64,000 nt of DNA, from IMG/VR virus record IMGVR_UViG_3300020147_000065, positions 157,109 through 221,108 of that record. One strand, written 5' to 3'. The notes beneath the pieces are model-generated. The model was not told where the DNA came from. It ran no database searches and worked only from the letters and a program-made list of their open reading frames with translations. Both the position numbers and the translations under genes were made by a program. Shown here in pieces: positions 47,058 to 61,190 of the stretch; position 1 is the first letter of the stretch, and each line of letters opens with the position of its first letter.

Positions 47058-47110
47058 GAGAAGCTAACAGCATTAAAATGATTCAGCTTATATCAAAAAC
47101 AATGCTTCTC
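47058..47110 (+). ncRNA. ACAGCAA-stem RNA copy 1
   Basis: GAGAAGC-TA-ACAGCA...GCTTCTC directly after the tRNA-Ser CCA. Confidence 0.6.
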
Positions 47111-47156
47111 GACCTTGACAATTCAATAAAAGTGTAGTAAAATCTACTACATATCT

Positions 47157-47232
47157 GGTGGCGTAGAATAGCGGCTAATTCGCTTGTCTGTCGAACAAGT
47201 TATCGCGGGTTCGAGTCCCGTCGTCACCGCCA
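47157..47232 (+). tRNA. tRNA-Asp(GTC)
   Basis: CTGTCGA loop, GCCA. Confidence 0.9.
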
Positions 47233-47233
47233 G

Positions 47234-47384
47234 AAGAAGCGCACAGCAATCTGCAAAATAAAGCATTTGTGTGAAAAACAAAACAATGTAGGTTCGAATC
47301 CTACCCTGCCCACCAATTAGTGGCAACTACTATCTTAGTTGTATTCAACTGGGCAGGTAGCTAAACTGGAAAACAACGCTTCTT
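47234..47384 (+). ncRNA. ACAGCAA-stem RNA copy 2 enclosing a circularly permuted tRNA-Phe(GAA)-like domain
   Basis: AAGAAGCG/CGCTTCTT stem; 3' tRNA part 47261-47315 precedes 5' part 47351-47371. Confidence 0.75.
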
Positions 47385-47389
47385 GTCTT

Positions 47390-47463
47390 CGGGACGTGGG
47401 CCAAAGGTAGGCCGCAACATTTGGGATGTTGACATCGGGCGAGTTCGATTCTCGCCGTCCCGA
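47390..47463 (+). tRNA. tRNA-Pro(TGG)
   Basis: TTTGGGA loop. Confidence 0.88.
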
Positions 47464-47613
47464 TTTGCAGTAAATTAGACTTGTGGTGGCCGAGCGGAAT
47501 GGGACATTTGTAGCATAGCCGTTAACTGCTACTTGTCGTAAGGACATAAACCACTTCGACTTCCGACGGGAAGCGTTTTTCGAGAATTGGACGGTGTTCC
47601 GCAACTGCATATT

Positions 47614-47687
47614 GTCTCCGTAGTTCAGATGGACAGAACGACAACCTCCTAAGTTGTATGTCGCAGGTTCGAATCCTGCCGGGGTCA
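47614..47687 (+). tRNA. tRNA-Arg(CCT)
   Basis: CTCCTAA loop. Confidence 0.9.
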
Positions 47688-47699
47688 TTGGAGATTATA

Positions 47700-47963
47700 A
47701 TGTTTGGTGTAGCGAAAGAAAGATTAGTCAATGTCTTAGCTCTATTGCAACATAGTCGTTGCGCCTATGGTTCAAGTGTTAAAGAACCTACTCAGCGATG
47801 CGATTGCAAGTATGTAGCTAAAGACGCCGAAACGCTCGGACGTTTCGGCTCAGAGAGTGGGTCAACCTGTCCTGAGTTGTCTATGGCTTACGCGATCATC
47901 AATTCAATGACTGATCGAGAATACGAAAGATTTTGTAAACGGGCTGGAATTAGCTTGACATAG
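47700..47963 (+). CDS. Cys-rich hypothetical protein
   Basis: GGAG RBS; CDCKY...CPEL. Confidence 0.65.
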   Translation: MFGVAKERLVNVLALLQHSRCAYGSSVKEPTQRCDCKYVAKDAETLGRFGSESGSTCPELSMAYAIINSMTDREYERFCKRAGISLT

Positions 47964-47994
47964 CCCGTGGAAAGTGATATAATTTAAAGTAATT

Positions 47995-48070
47995 GGGGGC
48001 ACATGTTCCAAGGGGGCGAGGAACCTTTGCAAGGTTCATGTGAAGAGTTCGATTCTCTTTGTCTCCACCA
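47995..48070 (+). tRNA. tRNA-Ala(TGC)
   Basis: TTTGCAA loop, G3:U70. Confidence 0.85.
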
Positions 48071-48182
48071 ATTCAGATTCGCTGACTGCACTGGCCTGAA
48101 ATATCGGTTATCACGCGAATGAGGTTAAGGTAGGCGCCTATACTTAACGCTAAGGGGTAAGTTAATAAACTCCCTTACATTT

Positions 48183-48253
48183 GGGGCTTTCGTTCAAGGG
48201 GAGGACGGGAGTATGGCATACTCTCAATCTGGGTTCGAGTCCCAGTTGCTCCA
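48183..48253 (+). tRNA. tRNA-Ala(GGC)
   Basis: ATGGCAT loop, G3:U70. Confidence 0.8.
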
Positions 48254-48257
48254 TTTT

Positions 48258-48332
48258 GGAAGGCAGGGCAAATGGTCAGCCGTCTTCGTGACAAGAAGAA
48301 TATAGCAGGTTCGATTCCTGTGCCGTCCACCA
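48258..48332 (+). tRNA. tRNA-Val(GAC)
   Basis: GTGACAA loop, ACCA. Confidence 0.8.
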
Positions 48333-48528
48333 ATCCGACCAGTGAACTGAATCCCACTTCGGCTGTACAGCGAGGCGTGAAAGGTGGGTAAAGGATAGCC
48401 AAAGTTCACCCTGAATAAAACAGGACAAATTGATACTGAGAGTTCTATACAGGCTTTGAAGCGTGAACGACCCGCACCATCTTAGAAGGTAGGCAATCCT
48501 GTAAAGGTACTATAGAGGCTCTCATTAT

Positions 48529-48601
48529 GTCCGCGTAGTGAAACTGGACATCACGCAACTCTACGAAAGTTGTAATGTAGGTTCGAATCCTGCCGTGGAT
48601 A
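48529..48601 (+). tRNA. tRNA-Arg(ACG)
   Basis: CTACGAA loop. Confidence 0.9.
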
Positions 48602-48751
48602 TTTTAGCGTGGCCCTTGACAGGCCACGCGGAACGTAGTATAATCTATTGCGTTGTAAACAAAGTCATGGGAAAAAGCAGAAGTCCTTTTCAACAGAAAT
48701 GTTGGGATTTGAAAGTTAGGTATGGAGAGAAATCTTCCGACAATTTGGAAT

Positions 48752-48826
48752 AGCAGGGTACCGTTCACGGTGAGCCGGACTTGACTGTTAATCAAGGATA
48801 GATGGGTTCGATCCCCATCCCTGCTG
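48752..48826 (+). tRNA. tRNA-Asn(GTT)
   Basis: CTGTTAA loop; atypical D-arm. Confidence 0.8.
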
Positions 48827-48834
48827 TAAAACAT

Positions 48835-48911
48835 GGTGGATGAAGCTAACCGGTCAGGCGCTTGATTGTGGCTCAAGTACATAGGGAGTTCAATTCTCCT
48901 CATTCACCCCA
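48835..48911 (+). tRNA. tRNA-His(GTG)
   Basis: G-1:C73, TTGTGGC loop. Confidence 0.9.
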
Positions 48912-48915
48912 TTAT

Positions 48916-48988
48916 GCTCCGGTAGCTGAGATGGTTCAAGCATCCGCCTGAAAAGCGGAGGACGAGGTTTCGAGCACCTCTCGGAGTA
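48916..48988 (+). tRNA. tRNA-Phe(GAA)
   Basis: CTGAAAA loop. Confidence 0.85.
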
Positions 48989-49153
48989 CTTAGCAGATAA
49001 TGAGCGCGATTGGCCACCGTGGTGAGTTATCTGTAGGGATAGAAAACTTCTGTCAGCCCCTAACCATAAGACAGATAATGGCTGTGAGAGAGTGCCCCGA
49101 CGCTGGGTGAAGCAAACGGAGAAAGACACTTCCCTGCTGCTCTCACATTTTAT

Positions 49154-49222
49154 CGCAGGGAGGCAAGGCGCCCAACGTGGCTCATAACCATGTTCTTGTC
49201 GGTTCGATTCCGACCTCTGCAA
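49154..49222 (+). tRNA. tRNA-fMet-like (CAT)
   Basis: C1:A72 mismatch, CTCATAA loop, reduced D-arm. Confidence 0.7.
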
Positions 49223-49298
49223 TGGCCCTTAATGCAGACTAACGACCTGCTCGACGTGTAACCCACGCCGATCCTCTAAGTGTAGGAGACGGGACACT

Positions 49299-49372
49299 CG
49301 GAATGTGGCTCAGCTTGGTAGAGCACACGCATGGGGTGCGTGAGGTCGAAGGTTCAAATCCTTTCATTCCGA
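49299..49372 (+). tRNA. tRNA-Pro(GGG)
   Basis: ATGGGGT loop. Confidence 0.88.
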
Positions 49373-49441
49373 CGGTATCTCAGGCCACTTGCACATCAGT
49401 GTAGGTACGGGGAAGGCTTCAAGGCCTTCCCCTTTAAATTT

Positions 49442-49509
49442 GGCGGCTGCATAGGATGCGATCAGGAATCATAATCCAGATTTTAACAGTTCGAGTCTGT
49501 TAGCCGCTA
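49442..49509 (+). tRNA. atypical tRNA-Met(CAT), reduced D-arm
   Basis: GGCGGCT/AGCCGCT acceptor, ATCATAA loop. Confidence 0.55.
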
Positions 49510-49707
49510 TGTGGATAAAGAAACTATACAAGCCATATTAGTGACAGTTTTCTACGGAGTGTTATTTATATGGTTGTTCTGGTCAATTGGTCAGTCATTG
49601 AAGGATTGTGATTTTGGGCAGGGGCCTGATCCAAAAGGGAATAACGACTGGTGGTGATCTGCCCCCCCCCCTTGCAGAACCTTGAAAATCGGAGTATAAT
49701 TTAATAC

Positions 49708-50001
49708 ATGAAGCCACCATTAGATGCAACTGGAAGAGAAATCTCCGTGGGTAGCAAATTGATGTACTGTATTGATGATGTATGGTCTTTCGGTGAAGTC
49801 GTAGAACTCAAGGAAAGAAAAAGATGTTATCAAGAATACATCGGTGTCGTTGTGAGCAAATGTTCTGTTAATCCTTACTGGTCAGAAATAAAAGCCGGTA
49901 AATCTGAGTTAATGTTTCCTCAAAAAGCAATCATTGTAGAGAATTTTCTATTTCTTCCAAATGATTTCTTAAAAAGACTTGACGAGGCCCGTGAAAAGTG
50001 A
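49708..50001 (+). CDS. hypothetical protein
   Basis: C-tract promoter; leaderless. Confidence 0.7.
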   Translation: MKPPLDATGREISVGSKLMYCIDDVWSFGEVVELKERKRCYQEYIGVVVSKCSVNPYWSEIKAGKSELMFPQKAIIVENFLFLPNDFLKRLDEAREK

Positions 50002-50026
50002 TATAATCTTTAGTGGTGATGAAATT

Positions 50027-50191
50027 ATGATGGGTTTAGGTGGACAAGAACTTTGGATAGTATTAATAATTGTGATGGTTCTCTTTGGTGGCTCGAAAGT
50101 TCCACAGTTAATGAAGGGAATCGGTGAAGGTATCCGAGAATTACGTAAGGGTGCAGAATACGACCCTGAAACACAAAAGACCGGCATCTAA
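50027..50191 (+). CDS. tatA: twin-arginine translocase TatA/E family subunit
   Basis: MGLGGQELWIVLIIVMVLFGGSKVPQLMKGIGEGIRELRK. Confidence 0.92.
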   Translation: MMGLGGQELWIVLIIVMVLFGGSKVPQLMKGIGEGIRELRKGAEYDPETQKTGI

Positions 50192-50202
50192 GGATGCCAC
50201 AA

Positions 50203-50279
50203 CACGGCGTACTCAAGCGGTCTAAGAGGCAGGACTTTCAATCCTGTAATCACGGGTTCAAATCCCGTCGCCGTGACCA
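50203..50279 (+). tRNA. tRNA-Glu(TTC)
   Basis: CTTTCAA loop. Confidence 0.9.
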
Positions 50280-50358
50280 ATGGGAGATAAGCCTGTACCA
50301 CGCTTTGCTTAATGGTTGGTACCCATTATGTAAGGTGAGGTGATGCTCCCCTCAAAAT

Positions 50359-50432
50359 GGCCCTGTCGTCTAATTGGAACAGGATAACACCCTCTCAAGG
50401 TGTAGAACCGGGTTCGAAACCCGGTGGGGCTA
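50359..50432 (+). tRNA. tRNA-Glu(CTC)
   Basis: CTCTCAA loop. Confidence 0.88.
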
Positions 50433-50437
50433 TTGTT

Positions 50438-50512
50438 GGCCGGATAGCGCAATTGGCAGGAGGCGTTGGACTCAAAATCCAAACAGTGCGGGTTCGAATC
50501 CCGCTCCGGCTA
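50438..50512 (+). tRNA. tRNA-Leu(CAA), short variable loop
   Basis: CTCAAAA loop. Confidence 0.85.
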
Positions 50513-50600
50513 TGGGATGTTTCTCGATTCATCCATCCTACGAGTAGTGTCGAGGAAAATAAAATCTTTCCGAGTAGTGTCGAAAGATAAAAATCGTATT

Positions 50601-50672
50601 GCTCGGTATGTCAAATGGCGCGACAGCAGTTTTACACACTGTTCCAAGGGGGTTCGATTCCCTCACTGAGCA
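50601..50672 (+). tRNA. tRNA-Val(TAC), irregular anticodon loop
   Basis: GCAGT-TTACAC-ACTGT. Confidence 0.6.
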
Positions 50673-50726
50673 TTATTTTTCTGAAAGGGGTTGACAAAGC
50701 CATCCACGGGTGGTAAAATAAACACC

Positions 50727-51014
50727 ATGAAATTAGTTCTTATCGGAGAAACCAGTTCTGGGAACGAGGATGTACTTGGAGGCGTTTTCAACATCGAAAC
50801 AAAGTATCCTCAACTGGCCACGGATGGATTTCAACAACAGGCTTTGCTTGAAGAACTTCTCACAAACTTAGCGGAAGCTAAGATAATCAAAGATAAAATC
50901 GGCATGATTCTTCCGAGTCTTACCGAAGAAGAGCATGAAGCTCTTATTGAGAGTCCTTTCGAGGACAATATAGGTGGTCCACAAGACCCTTGCCGAGGAC
51001 GGACACTCGGATAA
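50727..51014 (+). CDS. hypothetical protein
   Basis: TTGACA promoter; leaderless. Confidence 0.65.
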   Translation: MKLVLIGETSSGNEDVLGGVFNIETKYPQLATDGFQQQALLEELLTNLAEAKIIKDKIGMILPSLTEEEHEALIESPFEDNIGGPQDPCRGRTLG

Positions 51015-51020
51015 ACAATT

Positions 51021-51093
51021 GCCGTCGTAACTCAGCGGTTAGAGTGGTTGACTCTTAATCAATTGGTCGTAGGTTCGAATCCTACCGGCGGTA
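51021..51093 (+). tRNA. tRNA-Lys(CTT)
   Basis: CTCTTAA loop. Confidence 0.92.
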
Positions 51094-51200
51094 TCAAACT
51101 GGCAAGCAGGTGCGTTCTAAGGTATACGGGTTCAGGGTATACACTGGATGCCTATAAGGTAACTTAGAATTGGGGGTTCGAGTCTCCCAGTGCGAGGCAA

Positions 51201-51381
51201 AAGGTAGACACAGCAAACTTTTCACATTACATAAATTGCTAAACTTTTGGTGCTTAGCGCACCTCCGTGAGAGCGGGGCCTCTGAAACCAGTGTGGTGGA
51301 TGAGGGAAACAACTCCGAGGACTCGGCCTCGTTAATCCAGGGCGTAGTAACGAGCTACGATAAAAGCGGAAAAGCTACCTT
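51201..51381 (+). ncRNA. ACAGCAA-stem RNA copy 3 (multi-hairpin cargo)
   Basis: AAGGTAG-AC-ACAGCAA...CTACCTT; follows a T-arm-bearing element at 51101-51199. Confidence 0.6.
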
Positions 51382-51449
51382 GATTTAAATTCTTTGGAGG
51401 ATTGGTAACGATGAAACGAAAACAAACTGAAGACCCAGCCAAAATTTAC

Positions 51450-51535
51450 GCCGTCGTTGTCAAGAGGCCGAAGATAGCAGACTTTTAATCTGACGAGCGA
51501 AAGCTCCACCGGGGGTTCGAATCCCTCCGACGGCA
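51450..51535 (+). tRNA. tRNA-Lys(TTT) with long variable arm
   Basis: CTTTTAA loop; GAGC-GAAA-GCTC variable arm. Confidence 0.8.
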
Positions 51536-51537
51536 AT

Positions 51538-51807
51538 ATGCAAAGAATCAAAGAGACAAACCAGTGGGAACACATTCAAGTCTTCATTGGTAAACGCAAG
51601 GTTGTTGACGGGGATAAAGTCAGATTACAATTCCCCAACGGAAGCACTGAAGTGTTCGTAGTTAAGATTAAACACAGAAATGCGACCGTCCACGATATGG
51701 GACATCGGTATGATGTCACTCAAGAGATTCCAACTGTAGTCATAGATTACAATGGTCTTAAAGTCGAACTGAAAGTCTCAGATTTCAAATTGGGAGAGTT
51801 CGTATAA
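51538..51807 (+). CDS. hypothetical protein
   Basis: ORF starts 2 nt after the tRNA end. Confidence 0.65.
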   Translation: MQRIKETNQWEHIQVFIGKRKVVDGDKVRLQFPNGSTEVFVVKIKHRNATVHDMGHRYDVTQEIPTVVIDYNGLKVELKVSDFKLGEFV

Positions 51808-51817
51808 TCTCCTTATT

Positions 51818-51889
51818 GCGCTTGTAGTTCAGTGGTAGAACACCGACTTCTAGATTCGGGTGTGGCGGGTTCGAATCCTGCCGAGCGCA
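51818..51889 (+). tRNA. amber suppressor tRNA (CTA)
   Basis: CCGAC-TTCTAGA-TTCGG arm in a canonical body. Confidence 0.7.
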
Positions 51890-52020
51890 CTTCATCTTAA
51901 TTAAGGAGCCTACAATGAGCAAGTAGATTGACTTCATGTAGCTGTGTTCAAATAAATCACCACCCGTGGTTAGCCAGATTTCACAAACAACTGACTGACA
52001 ACAAACGGAGATTTAATACA

Positions 52021-52395
52021 ATGAACACCTTAGGAACAGCGATCACGTCGCAATTTTACGTGAACCCTGAAACCGGCTATGCCGACATTACTGCTGCTTG
52101 GAAACAAGCTCTGGCTGACAAGACACCGATGAACGCAGGTTCGTATATGCTTTATGCTATCCTGCGCGGCAAGGATTGGAGAAAGGGAATTAGTCCCATC
52201 ACCAATCATAACAAAATCGCAAACGGCGGTTATTATAACTCTGCTATGTATAATATAGGTTATCCTACCAGGATTCCTGAGTACTTTGCAGAACACGTTA
52301 AACCCGAAGCTCTAGCAATCATCAAGCAGATGATTCCTTCCTTCGGTTTGGATCTGCCCTCCGAAGCGTATTGCGTCAAGGAGGCAGTGAGATGA
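52021..52395 (+). CDS. hypothetical protein
   Basis: GGAG RBS; YAILRGK motif. Confidence 0.7.
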   Translation: MNTLGTAITSQFYVNPETGYADITAAWKQALADKTPMNAGSYMLYAILRGKDWRKGISPITNHNKIANGGYYNSAMYNIGYPTRIPEYFAEHVKPEALAIIKQMIPSFGLDLPSEAYCVKEAVR

Positions 52396-52409
52396 CGTAG
52401 TGGGTTTAT

Positions 52410-52697
52410 GTGATAGTAAGAACTGATATTCCGGTGGAGAATCAATTCGCGCAGATGGGACATGCGTGTATCGAAGCTGGGAGAAAATGGCCGCAAGCCA
52501 CGGGTGCAAACATCGTTATCCTTCAAGCTAAGGATCAAAAAGAATTTGATAAATTCCAAAGCCGATGTGAGCGAGACGGTATTCAGTTCGTAACATTTGA
52601 GGAAACAGAACACCCTGTGGGGACATGGGCTGCTTGCAGCGAACCAGTTACCGCAGATCAGAGAAGAACCTTCCGTTGTTTTCTCCTTCATAAGTGA
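52410..52697 (+). CDS. peptidyl-tRNA hydrolase Pth2-like protein
   Basis: IVRTDI....AQMGHACIE...IVILQAKDQ..F. Confidence 0.7.
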   Translation: MIVRTDIPVENQFAQMGHACIEAGRKWPQATGANIVILQAKDQKEFDKFQSRCERDGIQFVTFEETEHPVGTWAACSEPVTADQRRTFRCFLLHK

Positions 52698-52788
52698 CGA
52701 AAAGGACACCTTTCGGGGTGTCCTTTTCTTTCTAAAAATCTTTCAATTGACCTTGACAAACCCCGTGGTTTGCAGTAAAATAAATACC

Positions 52789-53073: not shown

Positions 53074-53080
53074 GGTAATT

Positions 53081-53154
53081 GGCCACGTAGCGCAATTGGT
53101 AGAGGCGTTTGATTTAGGATCAAAATGTTGGGGGTTCGAATCCCTCCGTGGCTA
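53081..53154 (+). tRNA. tRNA-Leu(TAG), short variable loop
   Basis: TTTAGGA loop. Confidence 0.85.
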
Positions 53155-53159
53155 TTTAT

Positions 53160-53231: not shown

Positions 53232-53236
53232 TTTTC

Positions 53237-53326: not shown

Positions 53327-53330
53327 ATTC

Positions 53331-53674: not shown

Positions 53675-54199
53675 ATGAGCATGAAACCCTTCCTGATTGA
53701 AGAAGCAGAAGCGATGGAGTTTGTTCAAGAACGACACAATCCTAAACAGAAGTATGGTAAATATCCTTATTTCTTCCACCTCTATCAAGTCAATTCTGTT
53801 GCTAAAGAATTTAACTTAAACGACCGTGTTATCCTTCTTTCTACGTGGCTGCATGATGCGTTGGAAGATACTGCAACAAACCCAAGTGACCTATCACAAG
53901 CATTCGGTGAAGACGTAGCCAGGACAGTTTATTATGTTACCGATCATAAGGGTTGGAATAGGGCTGAGAGGCATGAAAGGCTTTATAGAGAGATGGTAAG
54001 CCATCCACGGGCTGTAGCAGTTAAGCTCTGTGACCGCTTGGCAAATGTTCGCTTCGGTAACACTGCTAAGGATGGCTGTTCTCCAAATTATAAACGCGAA
54101 TATGCTGACTTCAAAGGTTACCTGTGGGGTAAAGGTGGAGAATTTGAAGGACGGCTGGGAAAAATTTGGAATGAACTTGATTTACTTTTACTTCGATAA
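53675..54199 (+). CDS. HD-domain (p)ppGpp hydrolase-like (Mesh1/SAH)
   Basis: H..QKYG..PY..HL; LHDALEDT; VKLCDRLANVR. Confidence 0.85.
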   Translation: MSMKPFLIEEAEAMEFVQERHNPKQKYGKYPYFFHLYQVNSVAKEFNLNDRVILLSTWLHDALEDTATNPSDLSQAFGEDVARTVYYVTDHKGWNRAERHERLYREMVSHPRAVAVKLCDRLANVRFGNTAKDGCSPNYKREYADFKGYLWGKGGEFEGRLGKIWNELDLLLLR

Positions 54200-54604: not shown

Positions 54605-55774
54605 ATGACAGCAATCCAACTCCCAACACTTTATTGTCGCCGTCAGGACGGCGGAATCAACCAGTGGACTATCGAAGTTGATGGTAGCCGCAAAAGAACT
54701 ATCTCAGGTAAGGTTGGCGGAAAACTCGTCGAATCTGCATGGGAACAATGTGTAGTAAAGAACGAAGGTCGCTCTAATGCGACCACACCCGAATCACAGG
54801 CTTTAGCACAGGCTCAGTCTGACTGGAATAAGAAAAAGGCACGAAAGTATTCGGAGAGTCCCGATACCGTTGATACTGATAAAATTTATCAGTGTATGTT
54901 AGCGAAAGACGTTCGCGGTGAATGGGATAAGAAAACCGAAACGTGGAAGAAACCCCACTGGCCGAAGATTGAGAAGGCATTGAATGAGGGGCAGAAAATC
55001 TTTGTTCAAGCTAAACTTGATGGTATTCGTTGTATCGCCAATAAAGATGGTTTATGGTCGCGTGAAGGAAAGAGATTCGTTTCTTGTCCTCACATCGAAG
55101 AAGCACTCAAACCTTTGTTTGCTGGACAACCCGATTTGATTCTCGACGGTGAGCTATTCAACTTTGAACTGCGTAACGACTTCAATAAAATCGCTTCGCT
55201 TATCAAGCGTCAGAAACCAACAGCAGAGGATATTGCTGAAACTGCTGAAAATGTGCAGTATCATATTTACGACGTTCCTTCTGTGGATGAATTGTTTGAG
55301 AAGCGGTGTCGTGGCTATAATGCGCTCTGCCGTGTTGCTGATAAACCTTTCATCGTTCCAGTCGAAACTTACGAAGTTAGCTCTCTGCAAGAGATTCACG
55401 ACCTCTACGACCTCTTTGCTGAGACACACAAACAGGAAGGCGCGATTATTCGCTTCAACGTGAAGTATCTGAATAAGCGCACCGACCAACTTCTGAAATA
55501 CAAGGTTTTCGTGGACGAAGAATTTGTAATTGTGGACGTTCACAGCGGAGTAGGTAAAGCCGCTGACCTCGCTTGTAAAATGTCCTTCGTGAATGAGGAC
55601 GGTAATCCTTTTGAGGCGACAACAACAGGTAGTGCAGAAACCCGACAGGGTTATCTAAAAGACCGCAATAATTTAATCGGTAAACGTGCAACGGTGCGTT
55701 ACGGAAATCGAACTCCTGATAAGAATGTCCCGCGTTGGGGAAGAATAATCGCTATACGTGATTACGAAAGTTAG
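54605..55774 (+). CDS. ATP-dependent DNA ligase
   Basis: QAKLDGIRC, LDGELF, YHIYDV, EGAIIR, LLKYK. Confidence 0.95.
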   Translation: MTAIQLPTLYCRRQDGGINQWTIEVDGSRKRTISGKVGGKLVESAWEQCVVKNEGRSNATTPESQALAQAQSDWNKKKARKYSESPDTVDTDKIYQCMLAKDVRGEWDKKTETWKKPHWPKIEKALNEGQKIFVQAKLDGIRCIANKDGLWSREGKRFVSCPHIEEALKPLFAGQPDLILDGELFNFELRNDFNKIASLIKRQKPTAEDIAETAENVQYHIYDVPSVDELFEKRCRGYNALCRVADKPFIVPVETYEVSSLQEIHDLYDLFAETHKQEGAIIRFNVKYLNKRTDQLLKYKVFVDEEFVIVDVHSGVGKAADLACKMSFVNEDGNPFEATTTGSAETRQGYLKDRNNLIGKRATVRYGNRTPDKNVPRWGRIIAIRDYES

Positions 55775-56503
55775 TTAGATGGCGAGAGATGTTAAGGCAT
55801 CTCTCGCCTCTTCTGGTGTAGAAAATCCGGTCTTTGCGTATCTTATTCCGTTAATTTTCTTTGCATATAACCATTTATCTCTCTTGTTATAATACACATT
55901 CGGATAAACATGTTGCTTTTTAACAGGAAGAGAAAAACCATCTTTTATTTCTTTCATGTAATTTTCTCGATTACTTGGAAAATTTAATCTTGCTTCTTTA
56001 CCGTAAAGTAATAGTGCTAATTTATCATAATGTTCTGCGGCTTCTTCCTCTGATAAGAAATCACAACGATAATATTCTTTTCCGTTTTTATCTCTTATAA
56101 ATGCTCTCCATTTTTCACTGGATGCATTATGTAAACAAACCCCCACATATCTTTTATTTGAGTTTTTCTTTACTCCTTGTTGACTGGTGGTAGAATTACC
56201 AAAACGAACATCTGCTGGGTTTCTAATTAAGTTATATCCGAATCTTCTGTCCCAAGACTTTAGCTCATTTATCCAGAAATACTCTCTGTCTTTTGCTTTA
56301 TCAAAATCTACAGTTTCTATAGGCTCAATCATAAAATTGTTTATACCATGAGAAGCCATTGCTTTATGTATAATTGTCTTAGCTCTATGACGAGCAAAAC
56401 TTTTGTGACCATTAAATCTAATATTAATTGGTTGGGTTGTTGAACCAATATAAATTTTCCCATTGAGTAGATTTGTGATCTTGTAGATATTGATCTGTTT
56501 CAT
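55775..56503 (-). CDS. GIY-YIG homing endonuclease with AP2 domains
   Basis: IYKITNLLNGKIYIGST; YVGV...WRAFI...EEEAAEHYD...LNFP. Confidence 0.9.
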   Translation of the reverse strand: MKQINIYKITNLLNGKIYIGSTTQPINIRFNGHKSFARHRAKTIIHKAMASHGINNFMIEPIETVDFDKAKDREYFWINELKSWDRRFGYNLIRNPADVRFGNSTTSQQGVKKNSNKRYVGVCLHNASSEKWRAFIRDKNGKEYYRCDFLSEEEAAEHYDKLALLLYGKEARLNFPSNRENYMKEIKDGFSLPVKKQHVYPNVYYNKRDKWLYAKKINGIRYAKTGFSTPEEARDALTSLAI

Positions 56504-56573
56504 ATAAATCCATACGGTTTACACTTGACATTGGTTCCGAAGTTTAGTAAAATAGTATATACAGGAGAAGAAA

Positions 56574-57887
56574 ATGCCACAAATAATTGATGAAGCGCGT
56601 CTGATATGTGCTAAATTCAAAGACGGGAAGTTAGTACATAATAAATTTTACAACATGACATTATACGACGACAACCGAGTGCGAATTTGGTATGGGCGAT
56701 ATGTTGAGGATGGCAGCGGTGGACTGAAAACACAGAGCGACGAAACGGTTCCTGGCGGTCGCGCTTTGTTTGATTCAAAATATCGTGAAAAGACCGGCCC
56801 AAGAAAAGGTTACAAGCCGCTCCCAGTCGTAGCGAACACAACTTCAGATAGTAAAATAGTTGTGGCTAAAGGCACACTTGCTGAGATTGCAGCAAAGCAA
56901 ATCAAGACTAACTCCGATGAAGTGTTTATGCTTATCAAACATCTCGCAGATGTTAATGTGCATCAAATTACTTCACAAACCTCTATCAAGTATGACGCAG
57001 CAACGGGTAGCTTTTCAACACCTTATGGTCTTGTTACTTCTAATGGTATTGATAAGGGGCGGACACTTTTAGGTGAGATTCATAGTCTGCTAACCACGGG
57101 CACCTTCGATAAGCGTTTTGAGACACTTGTTGAAGAATATATGACAATCATTCCACAAAGTGTTGGTCGCCGTTCAATCGGCCCGAAAGAAGTCTTTCCT
57201 AATCTTGATAAAGTCAAGTCACAAAACGACGTGCTTGATGCTCTTGAAGCATCTTTAACCGAGGCCAATAAACCTAAGAAGGAAGAAAAGAGCGACGAAG
57301 CGCAGGAAGTTGAGAAGTTGTTCGACTGCGTATTAGAGATTGTCACAGACCCCGCAGAATATAACCGCGTGGAAAGCCTTTATACTTCTTCTCGTAAAGA
57401 AATGCACGTAGCAGCACGTTTAAAACTACGTAAGGTTTACCGTGTTGTTATTAACCACATGACGCAAGCCTACAATAACCGTAAGGTTAAAGGTAATGAG
57501 CAAGAGTTATGGCATGGAACATCACCGGCTAACGTGCTTTCGATTCTTAAATCAGGCTTCATGATTTCGCCGCCTTCAACGGCGGCAATCGCGGGTAAAA
57601 ACTTTGGTTACGGTGTTTATTTCGCTAATGCCTCAACCAAGAGTTTAAACTACGCACACGGTTATTGGTCAGGCACTTATGCTCGGAAATGCTTCTTGTT
57701 TTTAAACAACGTGGCTCTTGGTAACTATTATGTTCCTGAGAACACCACGCGAAGCAATCCACCAAAAGGCTACGATTCATACTGGGCACAGGCGGGTAAA
57801 TCCTCCTGGTTACAGAATGATGAGATTGTGATTTTCGACACAACTCAGATTGAGCCTACTTACTTGCTGGAATTTGAGGACAACTAA
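56574..57887 (+). CDS. PARP-like ADP-ribosyltransferase (WGR + helical + catalytic)
   Basis: NKFY..WYGR; LWHGT; FGYGVYFA; NDEIVIF (H-Y-E triad). Confidence 0.92.
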   Translation: MPQIIDEARLICAKFKDGKLVHNKFYNMTLYDDNRVRIWYGRYVEDGSGGLKTQSDETVPGGRALFDSKYREKTGPRKGYKPLPVVANTTSDSKIVVAKGTLAEIAAKQIKTNSDEVFMLIKHLADVNVHQITSQTSIKYDAATGSFSTPYGLVTSNGIDKGRTLLGEIHSLLTTGTFDKRFETLVEEYMTIIPQSVGRRSIGPKEVFPNLDKVKSQNDVLDALEASLTEANKPKKEEKSDEAQEVEKLFDCVLEIVTDPAEYNRVESLYTSSRKEMHVAARLKLRKVYRVVINHMTQAYNNRKVKGNEQELWHGTSPANVLSILKSGFMISPPSTAAIAGKNFGYGVYFANASTKSLNYAHGYWSGTYARKCFLFLNNVALGNYYVPENTTRSNPPKGYDSYWAQAGKSSWLQNDEIVIFDTTQIEPTYLLEFEDN

Positions 57888-57952
57888 CCTTCGGGTTAGT
57901 TGTCTGCCCCCCCCCCTTGGCAACGACTCCATAATACTATATAATTTATTCC

Positions 57953-59077
57953 ATGAGCACAGAATATCACCATCCAGACGACAAAGCACTTATGGATTTA
58001 CAGGCAGGGGAAATCAAGATTATCAAACCTGATGAACCTCCCTTCTTAGTTGAACTCGATGAACTTGAAAGAGCAGCCGAACCCTTCTTTTTCGATATGA
58101 AATTCATCTTTCCTTACCAACATCACTTGAATGATGTTGAGGGACATATATTAGGGATTCAATACGATGGAGTTACCATTGCAAAATTCCAACAAGTTCA
58201 TGGTGGATTCTTTCGCCTCGCATGGACTAACGACCAACGACAGGAAGATATTCCGTGGGAAGTTCACGGTCTTTGTGTTGGCTGTGTAATCAGTTTCGAC
58301 CAACTTCTATTTGCAGTGAAATGGGCTTCATTCGCTAACAAATTGAAGTATAAACGCGGAACACGTTTCCTTAGTGATGGTGACGTGAAAAATCAATTAA
58401 ATAATCCAGAAAAGGGGTTGACACCACCCACGGAAAGTGGTAAAATAAATGGTGTTAAAGGAGAAAATATGTGTTTGGTAAATCCTCTGCAAAATGATGT
58501 GCAGACAGTTGTGAACGAGTTTGTTTCTCAGGGTAAATCTTTTACCGCTTTCGATGTGACCGTAGAAGTAGGCAACCGTGTAGGAATGAAGGTGCCTCAT
58601 CGCTACGTGAAGCCAGAGGTTGTCAATGCTCTGGAAACGCTACCCACGGGGTATGATGTGCGAATCCGCACCGACATTAACGGACAACCGCGCGAGTGGT
58701 ATAAGACGCAACCGGCAGCAGTAGCTACTCCGGCAACCGCTGCTGTTAAAGCGCCCGTGGCAAGCACAAATGTTGGTGTCGCAAAGAATGAAGATGGCAC
58801 TCGCCTTCGCGTTTTTCGTGACGCCCTTGAATCCGTTGGCTTCAAACCAGGTGAGAAAGTTCGTGCTGTATTCTCGCCTTCCATGAAAGCAGTATTTGTC
58901 ATTCCGACAACTTCTGTGTTTTCAACCAATGACCCTGACAAGAAGGATGCAGAGTATTCTGTGGACGTTCGACAGAATCTTCGCCTTCAACTGTCAACAC
59001 TTGGAATCCCTTCTGCCTCACAGGTAAGCGGTGTTTCTAAGGTTCAAGATAAAGTTTTGCAAATTTCTTTGCAATAA
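57953..59077 (+). CDS. hypothetical protein; probable internal gene start at 58469
   Basis: Internal TTGACA/TAAAAT promoter at ~58418 and AAGGAG RBS in frame. Confidence 0.65.
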   Translation: MSTEYHHPDDKALMDLQAGEIKIIKPDEPPFLVELDELERAAEPFFFDMKFIFPYQHHLNDVEGHILGIQYDGVTIAKFQQVHGGFFRLAWTNDQRQEDIPWEVHGLCVGCVISFDQLLFAVKWASFANKLKYKRGTRFLSDGDVKNQLNNPEKGLTPPTESGKINGVKGENMCLVNPLQNDVQTVVNEFVSQGKSFTAFDVTVEVGNRVGMKVPHRYVKPEVVNALETLPTGYDVRIRTDINGQPREWYKTQPAAVATPATAAVKAPVASTNVGVAKNEDGTRLRVFRDALESVGFKPGEKVRAVFSPSMKAVFVIPTTSVFSTNDPDKKDAEYSVDVRQNLRLQLSTLGIPSASQVSGVSKVQDKVLQISLQ

Positions 59078-59141
59078 CCCCTTGACAAACTTGCAGGAAC
59101 CACGTATAATATCTTACGTGCTAATGCATACATGATAAAAA

Positions 59142-59215
59142 GCTAAGACGTATGCGACAGGTAAAGCAGCTAAAAGCGGTGTGTTTTGCGGGTTCGATTC
59201 CCGCCGTCTTAGTCA
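59142..59215 (+). ncRNA. tRNA-like unit lacking a normal anticodon arm
   Basis: CTAAGACG/CGTCTTAG acceptor-like stem plus GCGGG-TTCGATT-CCCGC T-arm. Confidence 0.55.
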
Positions 59216-59216
59216 T

Positions 59217-59279
59217 AAGGTTCTAACAGCAAACAATCAAAATTGTTTACCATTTAATCAAACAAATCAAATGAACCTT
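59217..59279 (+). ncRNA. ACAGCAA-stem RNA copy 4
   Basis: AAGGTTC-TA-ACAGCAA...GAACCTT. Confidence 0.7.
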
Positions 59280-59285
59280 GAATTT

Positions 59286-59353
59286 AGGGGAGTAGCTCAC
59301 CGTTAGAGCGTCCGTCTGGAAGGTAGCAGGTTAAATTCCTGCCTCCCCTACCA
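59286..59353 (+). ncRNA. tRNA-like unit with truncated anticodon arm and CCA end
   Basis: AGGGGAG/CTCCCCT-ACCA; D and T arms intact; anticodon arm only TCC-GTCT-GGA. Confidence 0.7.
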
Positions 59354-59354
59354 A

Positions 59355-59455
59355 AAGATAGTTACAGCAATCTTTACAGCATAGCTTAATGGATAAGCAA
59401 AAGTCTTCAAAACTTTAGATTGCGGGTTCGACTCCCGCTGCAATAAAACTATCTT
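59355..59455 (+). ncRNA. ACAGCAA-stem RNA copy 5 carrying an acceptor-less tRNA(UCA) mimic
   Basis: AAGATAGTT/AACTATCTT stem; D-arm, AAAGT-CTTCAAA-ACTTT and T-arm inside. Confidence 0.75.
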
Positions 59456-59461
59456 GTAAAT

Positions 59462-59542
59462 TGGGATGAAGTTCTGAGGTGTTCGGAATATAGGCTCTCC
59501 GCGGAGTCGAAGGGGTAGGTTAAACTCCTACCGTCCCAGCCA
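59462..59542 (+). ncRNA. tRNA-like unit with 6-nt anticodon loop and CCA end
   Basis: TGGGATG/CGTCCCA-GCCA; GGCTC-TCCGCG-GAGTC. Confidence 0.6.
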
Positions 59543-59543
59543 A

Positions 59544-59613
59544 AAGGTCGAGACAGCAACTTAAAACGCATTTCACTGTTAATGAACGACGACGGGTTCG
59601 ACTCCCCTTACCA
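59544..59613 (+). ncRNA. ACAGCAA RNA copy 6 with the 3' part of a tRNA-Asn(GTT)-like unit
   Basis: AAGGTCG-AG-ACAGCAA, TTCA-CTGTTAA-TGAA, GGG-TTCGACT-CCC, ACCA; closing strand not found. Confidence 0.5.
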
Positions 59614-59665
59614 CCCCTTGACAACCCCCCGCGGTTAGTAGTATAATTACTTTGGTTTTGAAAGA

Positions 59666-59699
59666 AAGGTGCGAACAACAACAATACCAATAGCACCTT
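59666..59699 (+). promoter_or_regulatory. ACA(A)CAA-stem copy 7 in the 5' UTR, abutting the RBS of the DUF2828 gene
   Basis: AAGGTGC-GA-ACAACAA...GCACCTT-GGAGG-AATTATG. Confidence 0.65.
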
Positions 59700-59708
59700 G
59701 GAGGAATT

Positions 59709-61190
59709 ATGGCACGAATGAATAGCCTTGTGGCTGCGCTCAACACGACTGTAACTGAGAAGGGCGCTCTCACCAACCGCTCAAGCGGTTCTGCAATGTT
59801 GGATTTCTACGGACAGATGGGCGCTATGCGCGGTCAGTCTGACTCCAACGTAAACTCTACGTTCTCCGCGGCTTTTGCTGCTGAGCGAGCACTTGCTCTC
59901 CGTTCTCTCTTCTATCTCCGTGACGTTCGCGGTGGTAAGGGTGAGCGAAAGACCTTCCGCACCATCCTTGATTGGTTGGTAAAGAATGACCCACAGGTTG
60001 TAATCAATAACCTCGATAACATCTCGTTCTATGGTCGTTACGACGACCTTGCCCGTTTGATTAACTGCGGAAACACTAAGGTGAAGAACGCAGTGGTCGC
60101 AAAGGTCAAGGCTCAGCTTGCGGCTGACAAGAACGACGAACACCCTTCGCTCTTGGCTAAGTGGATGCCCTCCATTAACGCCTCGTCCACAGAGTCTAAG
60201 TCTCTGGCGAAGAAGTGGATTCGTGCTCTCGGTATGTCCGAGGCCGAATATCGTAAGACTCTTTCTGCGCTTCGTGCTCAGATTAAGGTTGTCGAGCGTT
60301 ATATGTGCGCCCGTGATTGGGATTCGATTAACTTCGAGCACGTCCCATCGAACGCTGCAAAGCTGTATCGTAAGGCGTTTAAGACCCGCGCACCTGAGCG
60401 TTACTCTGAGTATCTCGGTGCCGTAGAGAAGGGTGAGAAGACCATCAAGGCTTCTACTCTTTACCCCTACGACCTCGTTCGTCCTTACTTGAAGGCCGGT
60501 GGCTATTACGGTGGACGTGTAAGCGTTGACCGCACTATCGAAGCACAGTGGAAGGCTCTGCCTAACTACCTCGCTGACGATGACACCGACTTCTTGGTAA
60601 TCGCGGACACTTCGGGTTCGATGTTCGACCACTCGTTGGATTTCTTGCCCATCTGCGTATCAGTGTCTTTGGCACTATACTCGGCTGAGCGTAACCGTGG
60701 AGCCTTCAAGGGCTTCTGGATGAACTTCTCAACTTCTCCTACTTTCCAGCAGGTTCGTGGTGAGACTTTGGCTGACAAGATTAGCAACATGGACTACTCT
60801 AACTGGTGTGGTTCTACCAACGTTGACAAGGCTTTCGAGTTGATTCTTTCTCGCGCTCGCGCGGCGAATGTTCCAGCCGACGAAATGCCTAAGATGTTGA
60901 TGGTCATTAGTGATATGCAGTTTGACGGTCACTGCACCGTGACGAACCTTGAGACTTGGAAGAAGAAGTTCGCAACCTACGGTTACGAGGCTCCAACCAT
61001 CGTCTTCTGGAACGTAAACGCACGTCCTGGCCAGTCGCCAATTACTGTAAACGACAAGGGTGTAATGCTTGTTAGCGGTGCGTCCGCAGAGACATTCCGC
61101 GCTGTCCTTTCCGGTAAGAACTTGTCGGCTTACGACGCAATGGTTAATACTCTCAGCAATGAGCGTTACGACCGTGTTGTTGTAGACTAA
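59709..61190 (+). CDS. DUF2828 / TROVE-like vWA domain protein (Ro60-like architecture)
   Basis: TEKGA..SSG..LDF; LFYLRDVRGGKGER; LAKWMPS; LYPYDLV; ADTSGSM; SDMQFD; FWNV. Confidence 0.9.
   Translation: MARMNSLVAALNTTVTEKGALTNRSSGSAMLDFYGQMGAMRGQSDSNVNSTFSAAFAAERALALRSLFYLRDVRGGKGERKTFRTILDWLVKNDPQVVINNLDNISFYGRYDDLARLINCGNTKVKNAVVAKVKAQLAADKNDEHPSLLAKWMPSINASSTESKSLAKKWIRALGMSEAEYRKTLSALRAQIKVVERYMCARDWDSINFEHVPSNAAKLYRKAFKTRAPERYSEYLGAVEKGEKTIKASTLYPYDLVRPYLKAGGYYGGRVSVDRTIEAQWKALPNYLADDDTDFLVIADTSGSMFDHSLDFLPICVSVSLALYSAERNRGAFKGFWMNFSTSPTFQQVRGETLADKISNMDYSNWCGSTNVDKAFELILSRARAANVPADEMPKMLMVISDMQFDGHCTVTNLETWKKKFATYGYEAPTIVFWNVNARPGQSPITVNDKGVMLVSGASAETFRAVLSGKNLSAYDAMVNTLSNERYDRVVVD

What the first reader, a model, noticed from the sequence alone, without database searches (positions are those of the whole stretch)
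47058..61190. Candidate new RNP system: ACAGCAA-stem RNA family with tRNA-mimic cargo plus a DUF2828/TROVE-like protein
Seen: seven elements share one grammar: a 7-nt stem strand, 2 nt, ACAGCAA, variable cargo, then the complementary strand. They are 47058 GAGAAGC/GCTTCTC, 47234 AAGAAGC/GCTTCTT, 51201 AAGGTAG/CTACCTT, 59217 AAGGTTC/GAACCTT, 59355 AAGATAG/CTATCTT, 59544 AAGGTCG (closing strand not found) and 59666 AAGGTGC/GCACCTT (ACAACAA variant). The stems covary while the heptamer is nearly fixed. Six start 1-2 nt after a tRNA or tRNA-like 3' end, and four lie directly upstream of the DUF2828 gene. Established: Ro60/TROVE-vWA proteins bind Y RNAs through a terminal stem, and bacterial YrlA RNAs carry a tRNA-like module. 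Inference: this is an analogous but sequence-distinct handle-plus-cargo RNA family for the uncharacterised DUF2828 clade, for example anticodon-nuclease decoys, ribosome rescue or RNA repair.
Basis: partly seen in the sequence, partly recalled or inferred. Interest (0 to 1): 0.92.

Follow-up and report, generated by a model that had tools for sequence, protein, structure and literature searches.

The report
Y-RNA-like partners of phage Ro60-like protein
This phage, and hundreds of others, carry small RNA genes with one shared "handle" (a short stem plus ACAGCAA) next to the gene for a Ro60-shaped RNA-binding protein; they are probably that protein's undescribed partner RNAs.

Summary
Six of the seven elements fit the stated grammar; the seventh (59544) is degenerate. 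They belong to a very large, strand-specific RNA family: a 7-9 bp terminal stem with a conserved base (R-A-G-R ... Y-C-U-Y), 0-2 nt, ACAGCAA, a variable insert, an A-rich strand, then the closing strand.

The family is tightly linked to DUF2828/DUF7788 genes in both directions.
- In 80 viral loci chosen by the protein, 173 elements lie on the gene strand and 6 on the other. Most are within 500 nt of the gene.
- In 80 loci chosen by the RNA pattern alone, 48 hold the gene, always on the same strand.

The predicted protein fold matches Ro60/TROVE-vWA structures. HMMER and Pfam TROVE do not detect this. No Rfam family matches the window's copies. One mycobacteriophage relative gives a sub-threshold YrlA hit.

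Best reading: these are Y-RNA-like partner RNAs of a divergent Ro60 clade. They are excised from tRNA-punctuated transcripts. One copy sits in the gene's own leader, against the ribosome-binding site. Binding and function are inferred, not shown.

Two papers already guessed that such phages have Y RNAs, but none defines this handle. I rate it a new variant of a known kind.

The parts
47058..47110 (+). Element 1. Stem GAGAAGC/GCTTCTC, spacer TA, heptamer ACAGCAT, 30-nt A/U-rich insert. Starts 1 nt after tRNA-Ser(GGA). A TTGACA-type promoter follows it.
   Evidence: 36.5 bits, but it was in the model seed
47234..47384 (+). Element 2. Stem AAGAAGCG/CGCTTCTT and ACAGCAA. The 127-nt insert runs in YrlA-like order: T arm, an acceptor-like helix capped by a hairpin, UA, then a GG-containing D-like loop. 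It lies between tRNA-Asp and tRNA-Pro.
   Evidence: partial tRNA hit at 47253-47304; z -3.8; 20.1 bits
51097..51199 (+). tRNA-like sequence with a T arm, ending GGCA, directly upstream of element 3. Not called by ARAGORN or Rfam.
51201..51381 (+). Element 3. Stem AAGGTAG/CTACCTT, spacer AC, ACAGCAA. The 158-nt G+C-rich insert is of unknown nature.
   Evidence: not found by the covariance model because of the long insert
59082..59110 (+). Perfect sigma-70-type promoter (TTGACA, 17 nt, TATAAT) that would drive the RNA array.
59143..59215 (+). tRNA-like element 1. It has an 8-bp acceptor-like stem and a T arm but no anticodon arm, and ends GUCA.
   Evidence: weak tmRNA-type T-arm hit
59216..59280 (+). 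Element 4. Stem (T)AAGGTTC/GAACCTT(G), spacer TA, ACAGCAA, 40-nt insert with a small hairpin. The relative L002 has the same stem and spacer at 8758.
   Evidence: 39.8 bits, E 5e-7
59286..59353 (+). tRNA-like element 2. Cloverleaf with a vestigial 3-bp anticodon arm, ending ACCA.
   Evidence: (Rfam tRNA, 47 bits)
59355..59455 (+). Element 5. Stem AAGATAGTT/AACTATCTT and ACAGCAA. The insert is a whole tRNA-like body with anticodon loop CUUCAAA (UCA). Its own acceptor stem has two mismatches.
   Evidence: 29.5 bits
59463..59542 (+). tRNA-like element 3. It has a 5-bp acceptor stem, two hairpins and a T arm, and ends GCCA.
59544..59619 (+). Element 6, degenerate. AAGGTCG AG ACAGCAA is followed by an Asn-like anticodon hairpin (loop CUGUUAA) and a weak T arm. 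There is no canonical closing strand, only GUCGAG/CUUGAC.
   Evidence: not found by the model
59618..59647 (+). Second perfect sigma-70-type promoter, for the gene's mRNA.
59666..59699 (+). Element 7, a hairpin in the 5' leader. Stem AAGGTGC/GCACCTT, spacer GA, ACAACAA, 11-nt insert. It ends directly against the GGAGG ribosome-binding site. Two relatives keep it, with compensatory stem changes.
   Evidence: z -2.75; 19.4 bits
59709..61190 (+). Gene for the 493-aa DUF2828 + DUF7788 protein (PHROG 850 'RNA-binding protein'). The predicted fold is a Ro60-like HEAT ring plus a vWA domain, and the MIDAS residues are invariant.
61204..61239 (+). Intrinsic terminator after the gene.

Best explanation
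The elements are genes for small non-coding RNAs that play the part of Y RNAs for a divergent, mostly phage-borne clade of Ro60-like proteins (DUF2828/DUF7788, PHROG 850).

Shown:
- Each RNA closes on itself through a 7-9 bp terminal stem. The two conserved pairs at its base are A-U and G-C (5' R-A-G-R ... Y-C-U-Y 3'); the inner pairs covary.
- The 5' strand is followed, after 0-2 nt, by a nearly invariant ACAGCAA and then a G-poor stretch.
- The 3' strand is preceded by an A-rich stretch.
- Between them sits a freely variable module: a plain hairpin, an anticodon-stem-loop look-alike, a T arm, or a whole tRNA-like body.

Inferred:
- The stem base plus ACAGCAA is the protein's binding site (the 'handle'). 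The variable module is what the particle displays to other factors, as in Ro60-Y RNA particles.
- In this phage the RNAs are transcribed from consensus promoters in arrays interleaved with tRNAs or anticodon-less tRNA-like elements. RNase P and tRNA 3'-end processing would therefore cut them out with ends at the foot of the stem.
- One copy lies in the 5' leader of the protein's own mRNA, with its 3' strand touching the ribosome-binding site. This suggests that excess protein represses its own translation.
- By analogy with Rsr-YrlA-RtcB, and from the RNA-ligase/RtcB neighbours in relatives, the particle probably acts on tRNA or other structured RNA during infection: quality control, repair, or countering host defences.
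For: Linkage, protein to RNA:
- 80 IMG/VR loci with homologs at 36-48% identity hold 173 elements on the gene strand against 6 on the other.
- 66 of the 80 loci have at least one.
- 67 elements lie within 500 nt upstream of the gene and 28 within about 500 nt downstream.
- The pattern repeats in 80 bacterial/archaeal assembly loci: 165 against 7.

Linkage, RNA to protein:
- A 22-base RNA-only pattern found at least 113 viral stretches.
- 48 of 80 fetched loci hold a homolog, and all 50 elements there share its strand, mostly less than 300 nt away.
- Only 704 of 50,697 phage records have the gene at all.

Cultured phages from unrelated hosts show the same thing:
- Felixounavirus wV8
- Mycobacterium phage AvadaKedavra
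- Listeria P100-like LP-124 and cka15, where a promoter is followed by three tandem elements and then the gene

RNA-level structure:
- Stem pairs 5-8 covary while the heptamer is fixed.
- Single G-U mismatches outnumber A-C by 39 to 15.

Protein:
- The AlphaFold2 model has mean pLDDT 83.
- The eight best PDB matches are all Ro60/TROVE structures, aligned full length, with E from 5e-8 to 2e-5.
- The MIDAS residues D300, S302, S304, T370 and D402 are invariant.

Other support:
- One relative's element with a tRNA-like insert hits Rfam YrlA across the full model at 39.8 bits.
- The leader hairpin is kept with compensatory changes in the window, L282 (73% identity) and L002 (53% identity), always abutting GGAGG.
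- 91 of 411 elements have a T loop within 45 nt upstream, against 15 at random positions.
- Literature: Bas63 gp130 is Ro60-like, sits directly upstream of the tRNA genes, and counters a defence system (PMC11482910). CKA15_055 is Rsr-like by HHpred, with abundant non-coding RNAs upstream (PMC12282133).
Against: - No experiment shows that the protein binds these RNAs, or that discrete RNAs of this size exist. No RNA data were available for this phage.
- Co-location could reflect co-regulation or a shared processing pathway rather than binding.
- The canonical Ro60 recognition motif (GNCGAAN0-1G) is absent. Sequence methods do not link the protein to Ro60, so the analogy rests on a predicted fold.
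- The covariation alignment was chosen by requiring complementarity, which inflates its paired fraction.
- Three window copies (47058, 47234, 51201) lie 8-12 kb from the gene. 32 of the 80 pattern-found loci showed no gene in the DNA held, although many had short flanks.
Confidence: 0.7

Rival explanations
1. The elements are cis-acting processing or stability signals of tRNA-cluster transcripts: a nuclease entry site or a protective 3' hairpin. A host or other phage factor reads them, and the DUF2828 gene merely shares the neighbourhood.
For: Six window copies start 1-2 nt after a tRNA or tRNA-like 3' end. T loops within 45 nt upstream are enriched family-wide. wV8 copies sit between tRNA genes.
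Against: Most family members (320 of 411) are not preceded by a tRNA-like end. In the Listeria phages and the mycobacteriophage the copies sit between a promoter or the gene and nothing tRNA-like. Only a handful of the window's roughly 38 tRNAs are followed by one. The heptamer is the same in phages of Actinobacteria, Firmicutes, Proteobacteria and in archaeal bins, which argues for a phage-borne reader. The positional peak is at the gene, not at tRNAs.
Confidence: 0.12
2. The elements are only cis-regulatory leaders or attenuators that control expression of the downstream DUF2828 gene.
For: The last copy regularly abuts the ribosome-binding site. The density peak is in the 500 nt upstream of the gene.
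Against: There are several tandem copies per locus. Copies also lie downstream of the gene and kilobases away. Inserts as large as tRNA-like bodies, and copies bounded by tRNAs that would be cut out, do not suit a leader.
Confidence: 0.06
3. The elements are self-cleaving ribozymes that trim tRNA 3' trailers, like the HDV-like theta ribozymes reported next to phage tRNAs.
For: They start immediately after tRNA 3' ends. The phage carries suppressor-type tRNAs.
Against: No ribozyme family was hit, even at E up to 5. Only seven loop nucleotides and two stem pairs are conserved. The insert varies from 9 to more than 200 nt with no common core. The closing strand is followed at once by the next gene, leaving no room for an HDV-type nested fold.
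Confidence: 0.03
4. The elements are DNA-level repeats, such as a protein operator, a recombination site or a mobile-element end, and not an RNA.
For: They are inverted repeats flanking variable DNA, in many copies.
Against: The strand bias is extreme: 173 to 6 and 165 to 7. G-T mismatches are favoured over A-C. Arm spacing varies from 24 to 230 nt. The asymmetric heptamer is always on the 5' arm of the gene strand. The copies lie downstream of promoters.
Confidence: 0.03

Closest known systems
Bacterial and phage YrlA / Y RNAs bound by Ro60 (Rsr); Rfam RF02553; Chen et al. 2014, PMC4201824
   Same: Both are small RNAs encoded next to, and on the same strand as, a ring-shaped TROVE-vWA-fold protein. 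Both have a terminal stem formed by the 5' and 3' ends, with a conserved motif on the 5' side and a large A-rich internal loop. The distal module in some members is a tRNA look-alike (T arm, capped acceptor helix, D-like loop). There are often several copies per locus. Both can be linked to RNA ligase or RtcB genes.
   Different: The conserved motif is ACAGCAA after an R-A-G-R stem base, not GNCGAAN0-1G. No window copy reaches any Rfam score. The best relative scores 39.8 bits against a threshold of 69. Most members have no tRNA-like domain at all. The partner protein is not detected as TROVE by Pfam or HMMER. One copy is embedded in the protein's own leader.
Thermus phage phiLo Ro60 with Yrl1/Yrl2 (PMC12135203; PDB 9KOP, 9L5Y)
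   Same: A phage-encoded Ro60-fold protein with partner RNAs encoded just upstream. 9KOP is the best structural match to the window's protein model.
   Different: The phiLo RNAs were picked by the CGAA motif, and that protein is a recognisable Ro60 homolog. Here the sequence identity of the structural alignment is only 14%, and the RNA motif differs.
Published guesses for this same protein family: Bas63 gp130 (PMC11482910) and Listeria phage CKA15_055 (PMC12282133)
   Same: Both are the same protein family in Felixounavirus and P100-like phages. Both papers note the Ro60/Rsr resemblance and suggest that nearby 'tRNA genes' or abundant non-coding transcripts may be Y RNAs.
   Different: Neither paper identifies the RNAs or a motif. 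The elements described here are not the annotated tRNAs. In cka15 they lie at locus L088 6612-6876, which is not the 26,236-26,727 region that paper highlights.
tRNA-punctuated small RNAs (for example mascRNA-type processing, or phage T4 stable RNAs in its tRNA cluster). Recalled from general knowledge.
   Same: Small RNAs are released from a polycistronic precursor by tRNA-processing enzymes acting on flanking tRNA-like structures.
   Different: This is only an analogy for biogenesis. It was not tested here, and there is no shared sequence.

Membership tests
YrlA / bacterial Y RNA (Rfam RF02553) | Scores at or above the Rfam gathering threshold (69 bits) | tested here: not met
   The window gave no YrlA hit at E up to 5. 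A mycobacteriophage relative scored 39.8 bits.
YrlA / bacterial Y RNA (Rfam RF02553) | GNCGAAN0-1G motif near the 5' end (PMC4201824) | tested here: not met
   The sequences show ACAGCAA or a variant instead. None of the seven handles contains CGAA.
YrlA / bacterial Y RNA (Rfam RF02553) | tRNA-like domain with T arm, capped acceptor-like helix and D arm | tested here: inconclusive
   Present in elements 2 and 5, partly in 6, and absent in 1, 4 and 7. Family-wide, 69 of 412 inserts have a T loop.
YrlA / bacterial Y RNA (Rfam RF02553) | Encoded within a few kb of, and on the same strand as, the Ro60-type gene | tested here: met
   with the DUF2828-type protein in the place of Ro60.
YrlA / bacterial Y RNA (Rfam RF02553) | Physically bound by the Ro60-type protein | not testable with these tools
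   Needs immunoprecipitation or gel shift.
Ro60 / TROVE protein family | Pfam TROVE domain or HMMER-detectable similarity to solved Ro60 sequences | tested here: not met
   Pfam gives only DUF2828 and DUF7788. A profile of 30 homologs found no Ro60 chain at E up to 10.
Ro60 / TROVE protein family | HEAT-repeat ring followed by a vWA domain with a MIDAS motif | tested here: met
   This rests on a predicted model only (pLDDT 83). The top 8 Foldseek PDB hits are Ro60 structures at probability 1.0. DxSxS...T...D is invariant.
HDV-like (theta) or other self-cleaving ribozymes next to phage tRNAs | Conserved catalytic core and nested fold; match to a ribozyme covariance model | tested here: not met
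   No ribozyme hit. The inserts share no common core.

The most novel reading that the evidence does not exclude
The family may be a modular 'bait library'. A constant handle loads each RNA onto the Ro60-like ring. The variable module often copies the anticodon stem-loop of a particular tRNA. With covarying 5-bp stems, CUUUUAA (tRNA-Lys UUU) is the commonest loop and CUGUUAA (tRNA-Asn GUU) the second. These are the kinds of loops that bacterial anticodon nucleases cut.

The particle would then decoy, sense or help repair damage from host tRNA-cleaving defences. Some relatives package the protein in the virion (PMC12282133), so it could act from the first minute of infection.
Probability: 0.2. 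Interest if true: 0.85.

Novelty: new variant of a known kind. Interest (0 to 1): 0.72.

Why it matters
PHROG 850 / DUF2828 is one of the commoner 'RNA-binding protein' families of large phages. It occurs in 704 of 50,697 phage records, more than 7,500 protein clusters matched the window's protein, and members include FelixO1-like, P100/A511-like, cluster-level mycobacteriophages and many gut phages. Its RNA partners have not been defined.

A simple, searchable handle gives candidate ligands in model phages of E. coli, Listeria and Mycobacterium. That makes several questions directly testable:
- what a phage Ro60-like particle binds
- how it is regulated
- whether it explains the reported counter-defence activity of Bas63 gp130

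It also shows that Ro60-type proteins can use a recognition motif quite unlike the one conserved from bacteria to humans. Many 'intergenic' stretches and spurious small ORFs in phage tRNA regions would be re-annotated as RNA genes.

Tried and rejected
- Known RNA families: Rfam at gathering and at E up to 5 gave only tRNAs, a tmRNA and noise on the window's elements.
- Ribozyme reading (HDV-like/theta, hatchet and others): rejected on architecture and for lack of any hit.
- Close relatives in the GenBank phage collection by DNA: none; only tRNA-sized matches.
- Single-protein locus search: returned only the window's own contig. An alignment query was needed.
- Profile against PDB sequences: nothing. 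Only fold comparison showed the Ro60 link.
- RNA-seq for this phage: only soil DNA runs hold it, plus one unrelated wastewater RNA run with 5% of the words.
- Supplementary tables of Chen et al. 2014, to see which phages they covered: not held.
- Extra model hits at 31504-31553 (-) and 17671-17742 (+): both are antisense inside long ORFs, so I treated them as chance.
- The contig of the closest relative, P0002: no DNA could be fetched.
- Closing strand for the 59544 copy: only a 4-bp AAGG/CCTT or a 6-bp GUCGAG/CUUGAC pairing was found.

Full report
WHAT IS IN THE WINDOW

The window is the last 64 kb of a 221-kb viral contig, IMGVR_UViG_3300020147_000065. It holds about 38 tRNA genes and a tmRNA.

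The seven reported elements are at the stated places.
- Six follow the grammar exactly: a stem strand starting R-A-G-R, then 0-2 nt, a heptamer, an insert, then the complementary strand.
- The heptamer is ACAGCAA in five copies, ACAGCAT at 47058 and ACAACAA at 59666.
- The copy at 59544 has the 5' half but no proper closing strand. Folding offers only GUCGAG/CUUGAC, which overlaps the next promoter's -35 box.

IS IT MORE THAN CHANCE?

- The heptamer alone is not enriched: 10 found against 9 expected.
- The grammar is. AAG-N6-ACAGCAA occurs five times, all on the + strand within 12 kb.
- With a closing stem required, the + strand has 10 sites and the - strand 3. Dinucleotide shuffles give 3.2 for both strands together.
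- I built a covariance model from 62 short elements, 61 of them from other phages. With filters off it recovers 59217 (39.8 bits, E 5e-7), 59355 (29.5 bits), 47234 (20.1 bits) and 59666 (19.4 bits). It also recovers 47058, which was in the seed.
- The model misses the long-insert copy at 51201 and the degenerate 59544.
- Two further weak hits are antisense inside long ORFs and look like chance.

LOCAL ANATOMY

- A perfect TTGACA-17-TATAAT promoter lies at 59082-59110.
- After it come, in order: tRNA-like element 1, element 4, tRNA-like element 2, element 5, tRNA-like element 3 and element 6.
- A second perfect promoter at 59618-59647 precedes element 7, GGAGG, the ATG at 59709, the stop at 61190 and a strong terminator at 61204-61239.
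- The tRNA-like elements fold as cloverleaves with a T arm and an acceptor stem, but with a vestigial anticodon arm or none. Only one of them is called as a tRNA, by Rfam.
- Elements 1 and 2 sit between ordinary tRNAs (Ser, Asp, Pro). Element 3 follows another tRNA-like sequence.
- Every element therefore begins 1-2 nt after a tRNA-type 3' end. Most end a few nt before the next tRNA-type 5' end or a promoter.

THE FAMILY ELSEWHERE

The 493-aa protein is DUF2828 + DUF7788 and PHROG 850 'RNA-binding protein'.

A 53%-identical, syntenic relative (L002: RNA ligase, ligase, PARP, then the gene) has the same elements upstream of its gene. One of them has the identical stem and spacer as element 4. 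It also has a leader hairpin abutting GGAGG.

I then took 80 viral loci chosen only by protein similarity (36-48% identity) and scanned them for stem + heptamer + closing strand.
- 173 elements with the conserved stem base were on the gene strand and 6 on the other.
- 66 of the 80 loci had at least one.
- There was a sharp peak in the 500 nt upstream of the start codon (67 elements) and a second peak just after the stop (28 elements).

Eighty loci from bacterial and archaeal assemblies gave 165 against 7, with 67 of 80 loci positive.

In the reverse direction, a 22-base RNA-only pattern (one particular stem, the heptamer and its closing strand) hit at least 113 viral stretches.
- In 48 of the 80 loci fetched, a DUF2828 homolog lay in the DNA held.
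- All 50 elements there shared the gene's strand, mostly within 300 nt of it.
- The gene occurs in only 1.4% of GenBank phage records, so the association is very strong both ways.

Cultured phages show the same:
- Felixounavirus wV8 has four copies in the tRNA cluster that starts right after the gene.
- Mycobacterium phage AvadaKedavra has three copies after its 'Ro-like RNA binding protein' gene.
- Listeria phages LP-124 and cka15 have a sigma-A promoter, three tandem copies and then the gene, with RtcB and an RNA ligase downstream.

CONSENSUS OF THE HANDLE

- In the 62-sequence alignment the second and third stem pairs are nearly invariant: A-U and G-C in 59 of 62.
- The next four pairs switch freely among C-G, U-A, G-C and A-U. 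The heptamer core CAGCA is invariant.
- These rows were chosen by requiring complementarity. The paired fraction is therefore partly built in, but the variety of pair types is not.
- Over 412 unique elements, ACAGCAA accounts for 329 and UCAGCAA for 49.
- The 7 nt after the heptamer hold only 3-5% G. The 5 nt before the closing strand are 42-60% A.
- Single G-U mismatches outnumber A-C by 39 to 15, as expected for pairing in an RNA of that strand.

THE PROTEIN

- HMMER sees no solved relative.
- An AlphaFold2 model built on 30 homologs (mean pLDDT 83) has Ro60 structures as its eight best PDB matches. These are the Thermus phage phiLo Ro60, Xenopus Ro60 with RNAs, and Deinococcus Rsr, aligned over the full length with E from 5e-8 to 2e-5.
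- The next matches are isolated vWA/MIDAS domains.
- The MIDAS residues are invariant in the family.
- The protein is therefore a sequence-divergent Ro60-fold protein. This agrees with database labels such as 'Ro-like RNA binding protein'.

RELATION TO KNOWN Y RNAs

- Canonical bacterial Y RNAs (YrlA) carry GNCGAAN0-1G near the 5' end and a tRNA-like domain (PMC4201824). The elements here have a different motif.
- Only a subset carry tRNA-like parts: 69 of 412 inserts have a T loop.
- One such relative, in the mycobacteriophage, aligns to the whole Rfam YrlA model at 39.8 bits, below the threshold of 69.
- Element 2 of the window has the YrlA order of modules: T arm, capped acceptor-like helix, UA, then a GG-containing loop.
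- The family thus works like Y RNAs and overlaps YrlA at its edge. It fails the defining sequence features of YrlA, so I do not file it as a member.

THE INSERTS

- About two thirds are plain A/U-rich hairpins.
- Hairpins with a 5-bp stem and a 7-nt loop of anticodon-loop form occur in cargo at 4.0 per kb. The rest of the same strands, which include real tRNA genes, have 1.44 per kb.
- The commonest loops are CUUUUAA (16 cases, Lys-UUU type) and CUGUUAA (10 cases, Asn-GUU type), on many different covarying stems.
- Element 6 carries CUGUUAA. Element 5 carries a whole tRNA-like body with anticodon UCA and a mismatched acceptor stem.
- This makes an 'anticodon-loop bait' idea worth testing, but it is a minority feature and remains an inference.

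MECHANISM I COMMIT TO

Shown:
- the RNA-level motif
- its covariation and strand bias
- its two-way linkage to the gene
- the Ro60-like predicted fold
- the promoters and tRNA-type flanks
- the conserved leader copy at the ribosome-binding site, with compensatory changes in three relatives

Inferred:
- The handle is the protein's binding site.
- tRNA-processing enzymes excise the RNAs.
- The leader copy gives autogenous translational control.
- The particle acts on tRNA or structured RNA in the contest with host defences.

The literature fits this reading but does not prove it. Bas63 gp130 is a Ro60-like protein directly upstream of the tRNA genes and counters the ppl defence system (PMC11482910). 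CKA15_055 is Rsr-like, is found in virions, and lies downstream of very abundant non-coding transcripts (PMC12282133).

NOVELTY

- Full-text searches for DUF2828, for the heptamer with 'phage', and for Ro-like/Y RNA/phage found no paper that defines these RNAs.
- The general idea has been voiced twice, and the paradigm (Ro60 plus Y RNA, including in phages) is established.
- I therefore rate this a new variant of a known kind.
- Its practical value is that it gives concrete candidate ligands in several model phages.

Noticed in passing
window 51818-51890 and 51917-51950: There is an amber-suppressor-type tRNA (anticodon CTA). Just after it comes an RBS-ATG start whose frame meets TAG at codons 4 and 9. 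Together with the UCA tRNA-like body in element 5, this hints at stop-codon reassignment in part of the genome.
   Followed up: no
window 41022-41417 (-): A full-length tmRNA gene (Rfam, 89 bits). The relative L002 also has one, at 15783-16193.
   Followed up: no
window 56574-57887 (+), 62872-63447 (+), 53675-54199 (+): Three genes flank the RNA array: a PARP-like protein (WGR, PARP regulatory and catalytic domains), a Macro-domain protein and an HD_4 hydrolase. Together they look like an ADP-ribosylation toolkit. The PARP and HD_4 genes are syntenic in L002.
   Followed up: partly
window 55775-56503 (-): A GIY-YIG plus AP2 homing-endonuclease-like gene is inserted on the opposite strand, between the ligase and the PARP gene.
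   Followed up: no
window 57953-59077 (+): A 374-aa ORF directly upstream of the RNA array has no Pfam or PHROG match.
   Followed up: partly
L088 5438-5929 (cka15 record 26,236-26,727): This roughly 490-nt region is reported as the most abundant transcript of Listeria phage CKA15. It has its own TTGACA promoter and contains none of the ACAGCAA elements. It is therefore a different, still unexplained non-coding RNA.
   Followed up: partly
L202 1412-1659, L216 3792-3913: Contigs binned as Promethearchaeota (Asgard archaea) carry a DUF2828 homolog with ACAGCAA elements upstream. They may be viral contigs in archaeal bins.
   Followed up: no
L090 122-714 (-): A 15.6-kb contig labelled as a giant-virus MAG has three tandem elements with the identical AAGACAC stem. 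No DUF2828 homolog was found in the DNA held.
   Followed up: no
L087 9404-13116; L002 1362-2453: Relatives place RtcB-type and Rnl-type RNA ligases, a HAD protein and a phosphoesterase within a few kb downstream or upstream of the gene. This echoes the bacterial rsr-yrlA-rtcBA arrangement.
   Followed up: partly
window 48012-48070 (+): A weak Rfam tmRNA-type hit (22 bits) in the tRNA cluster, possibly another tRNA-like fragment.
   Followed up: no
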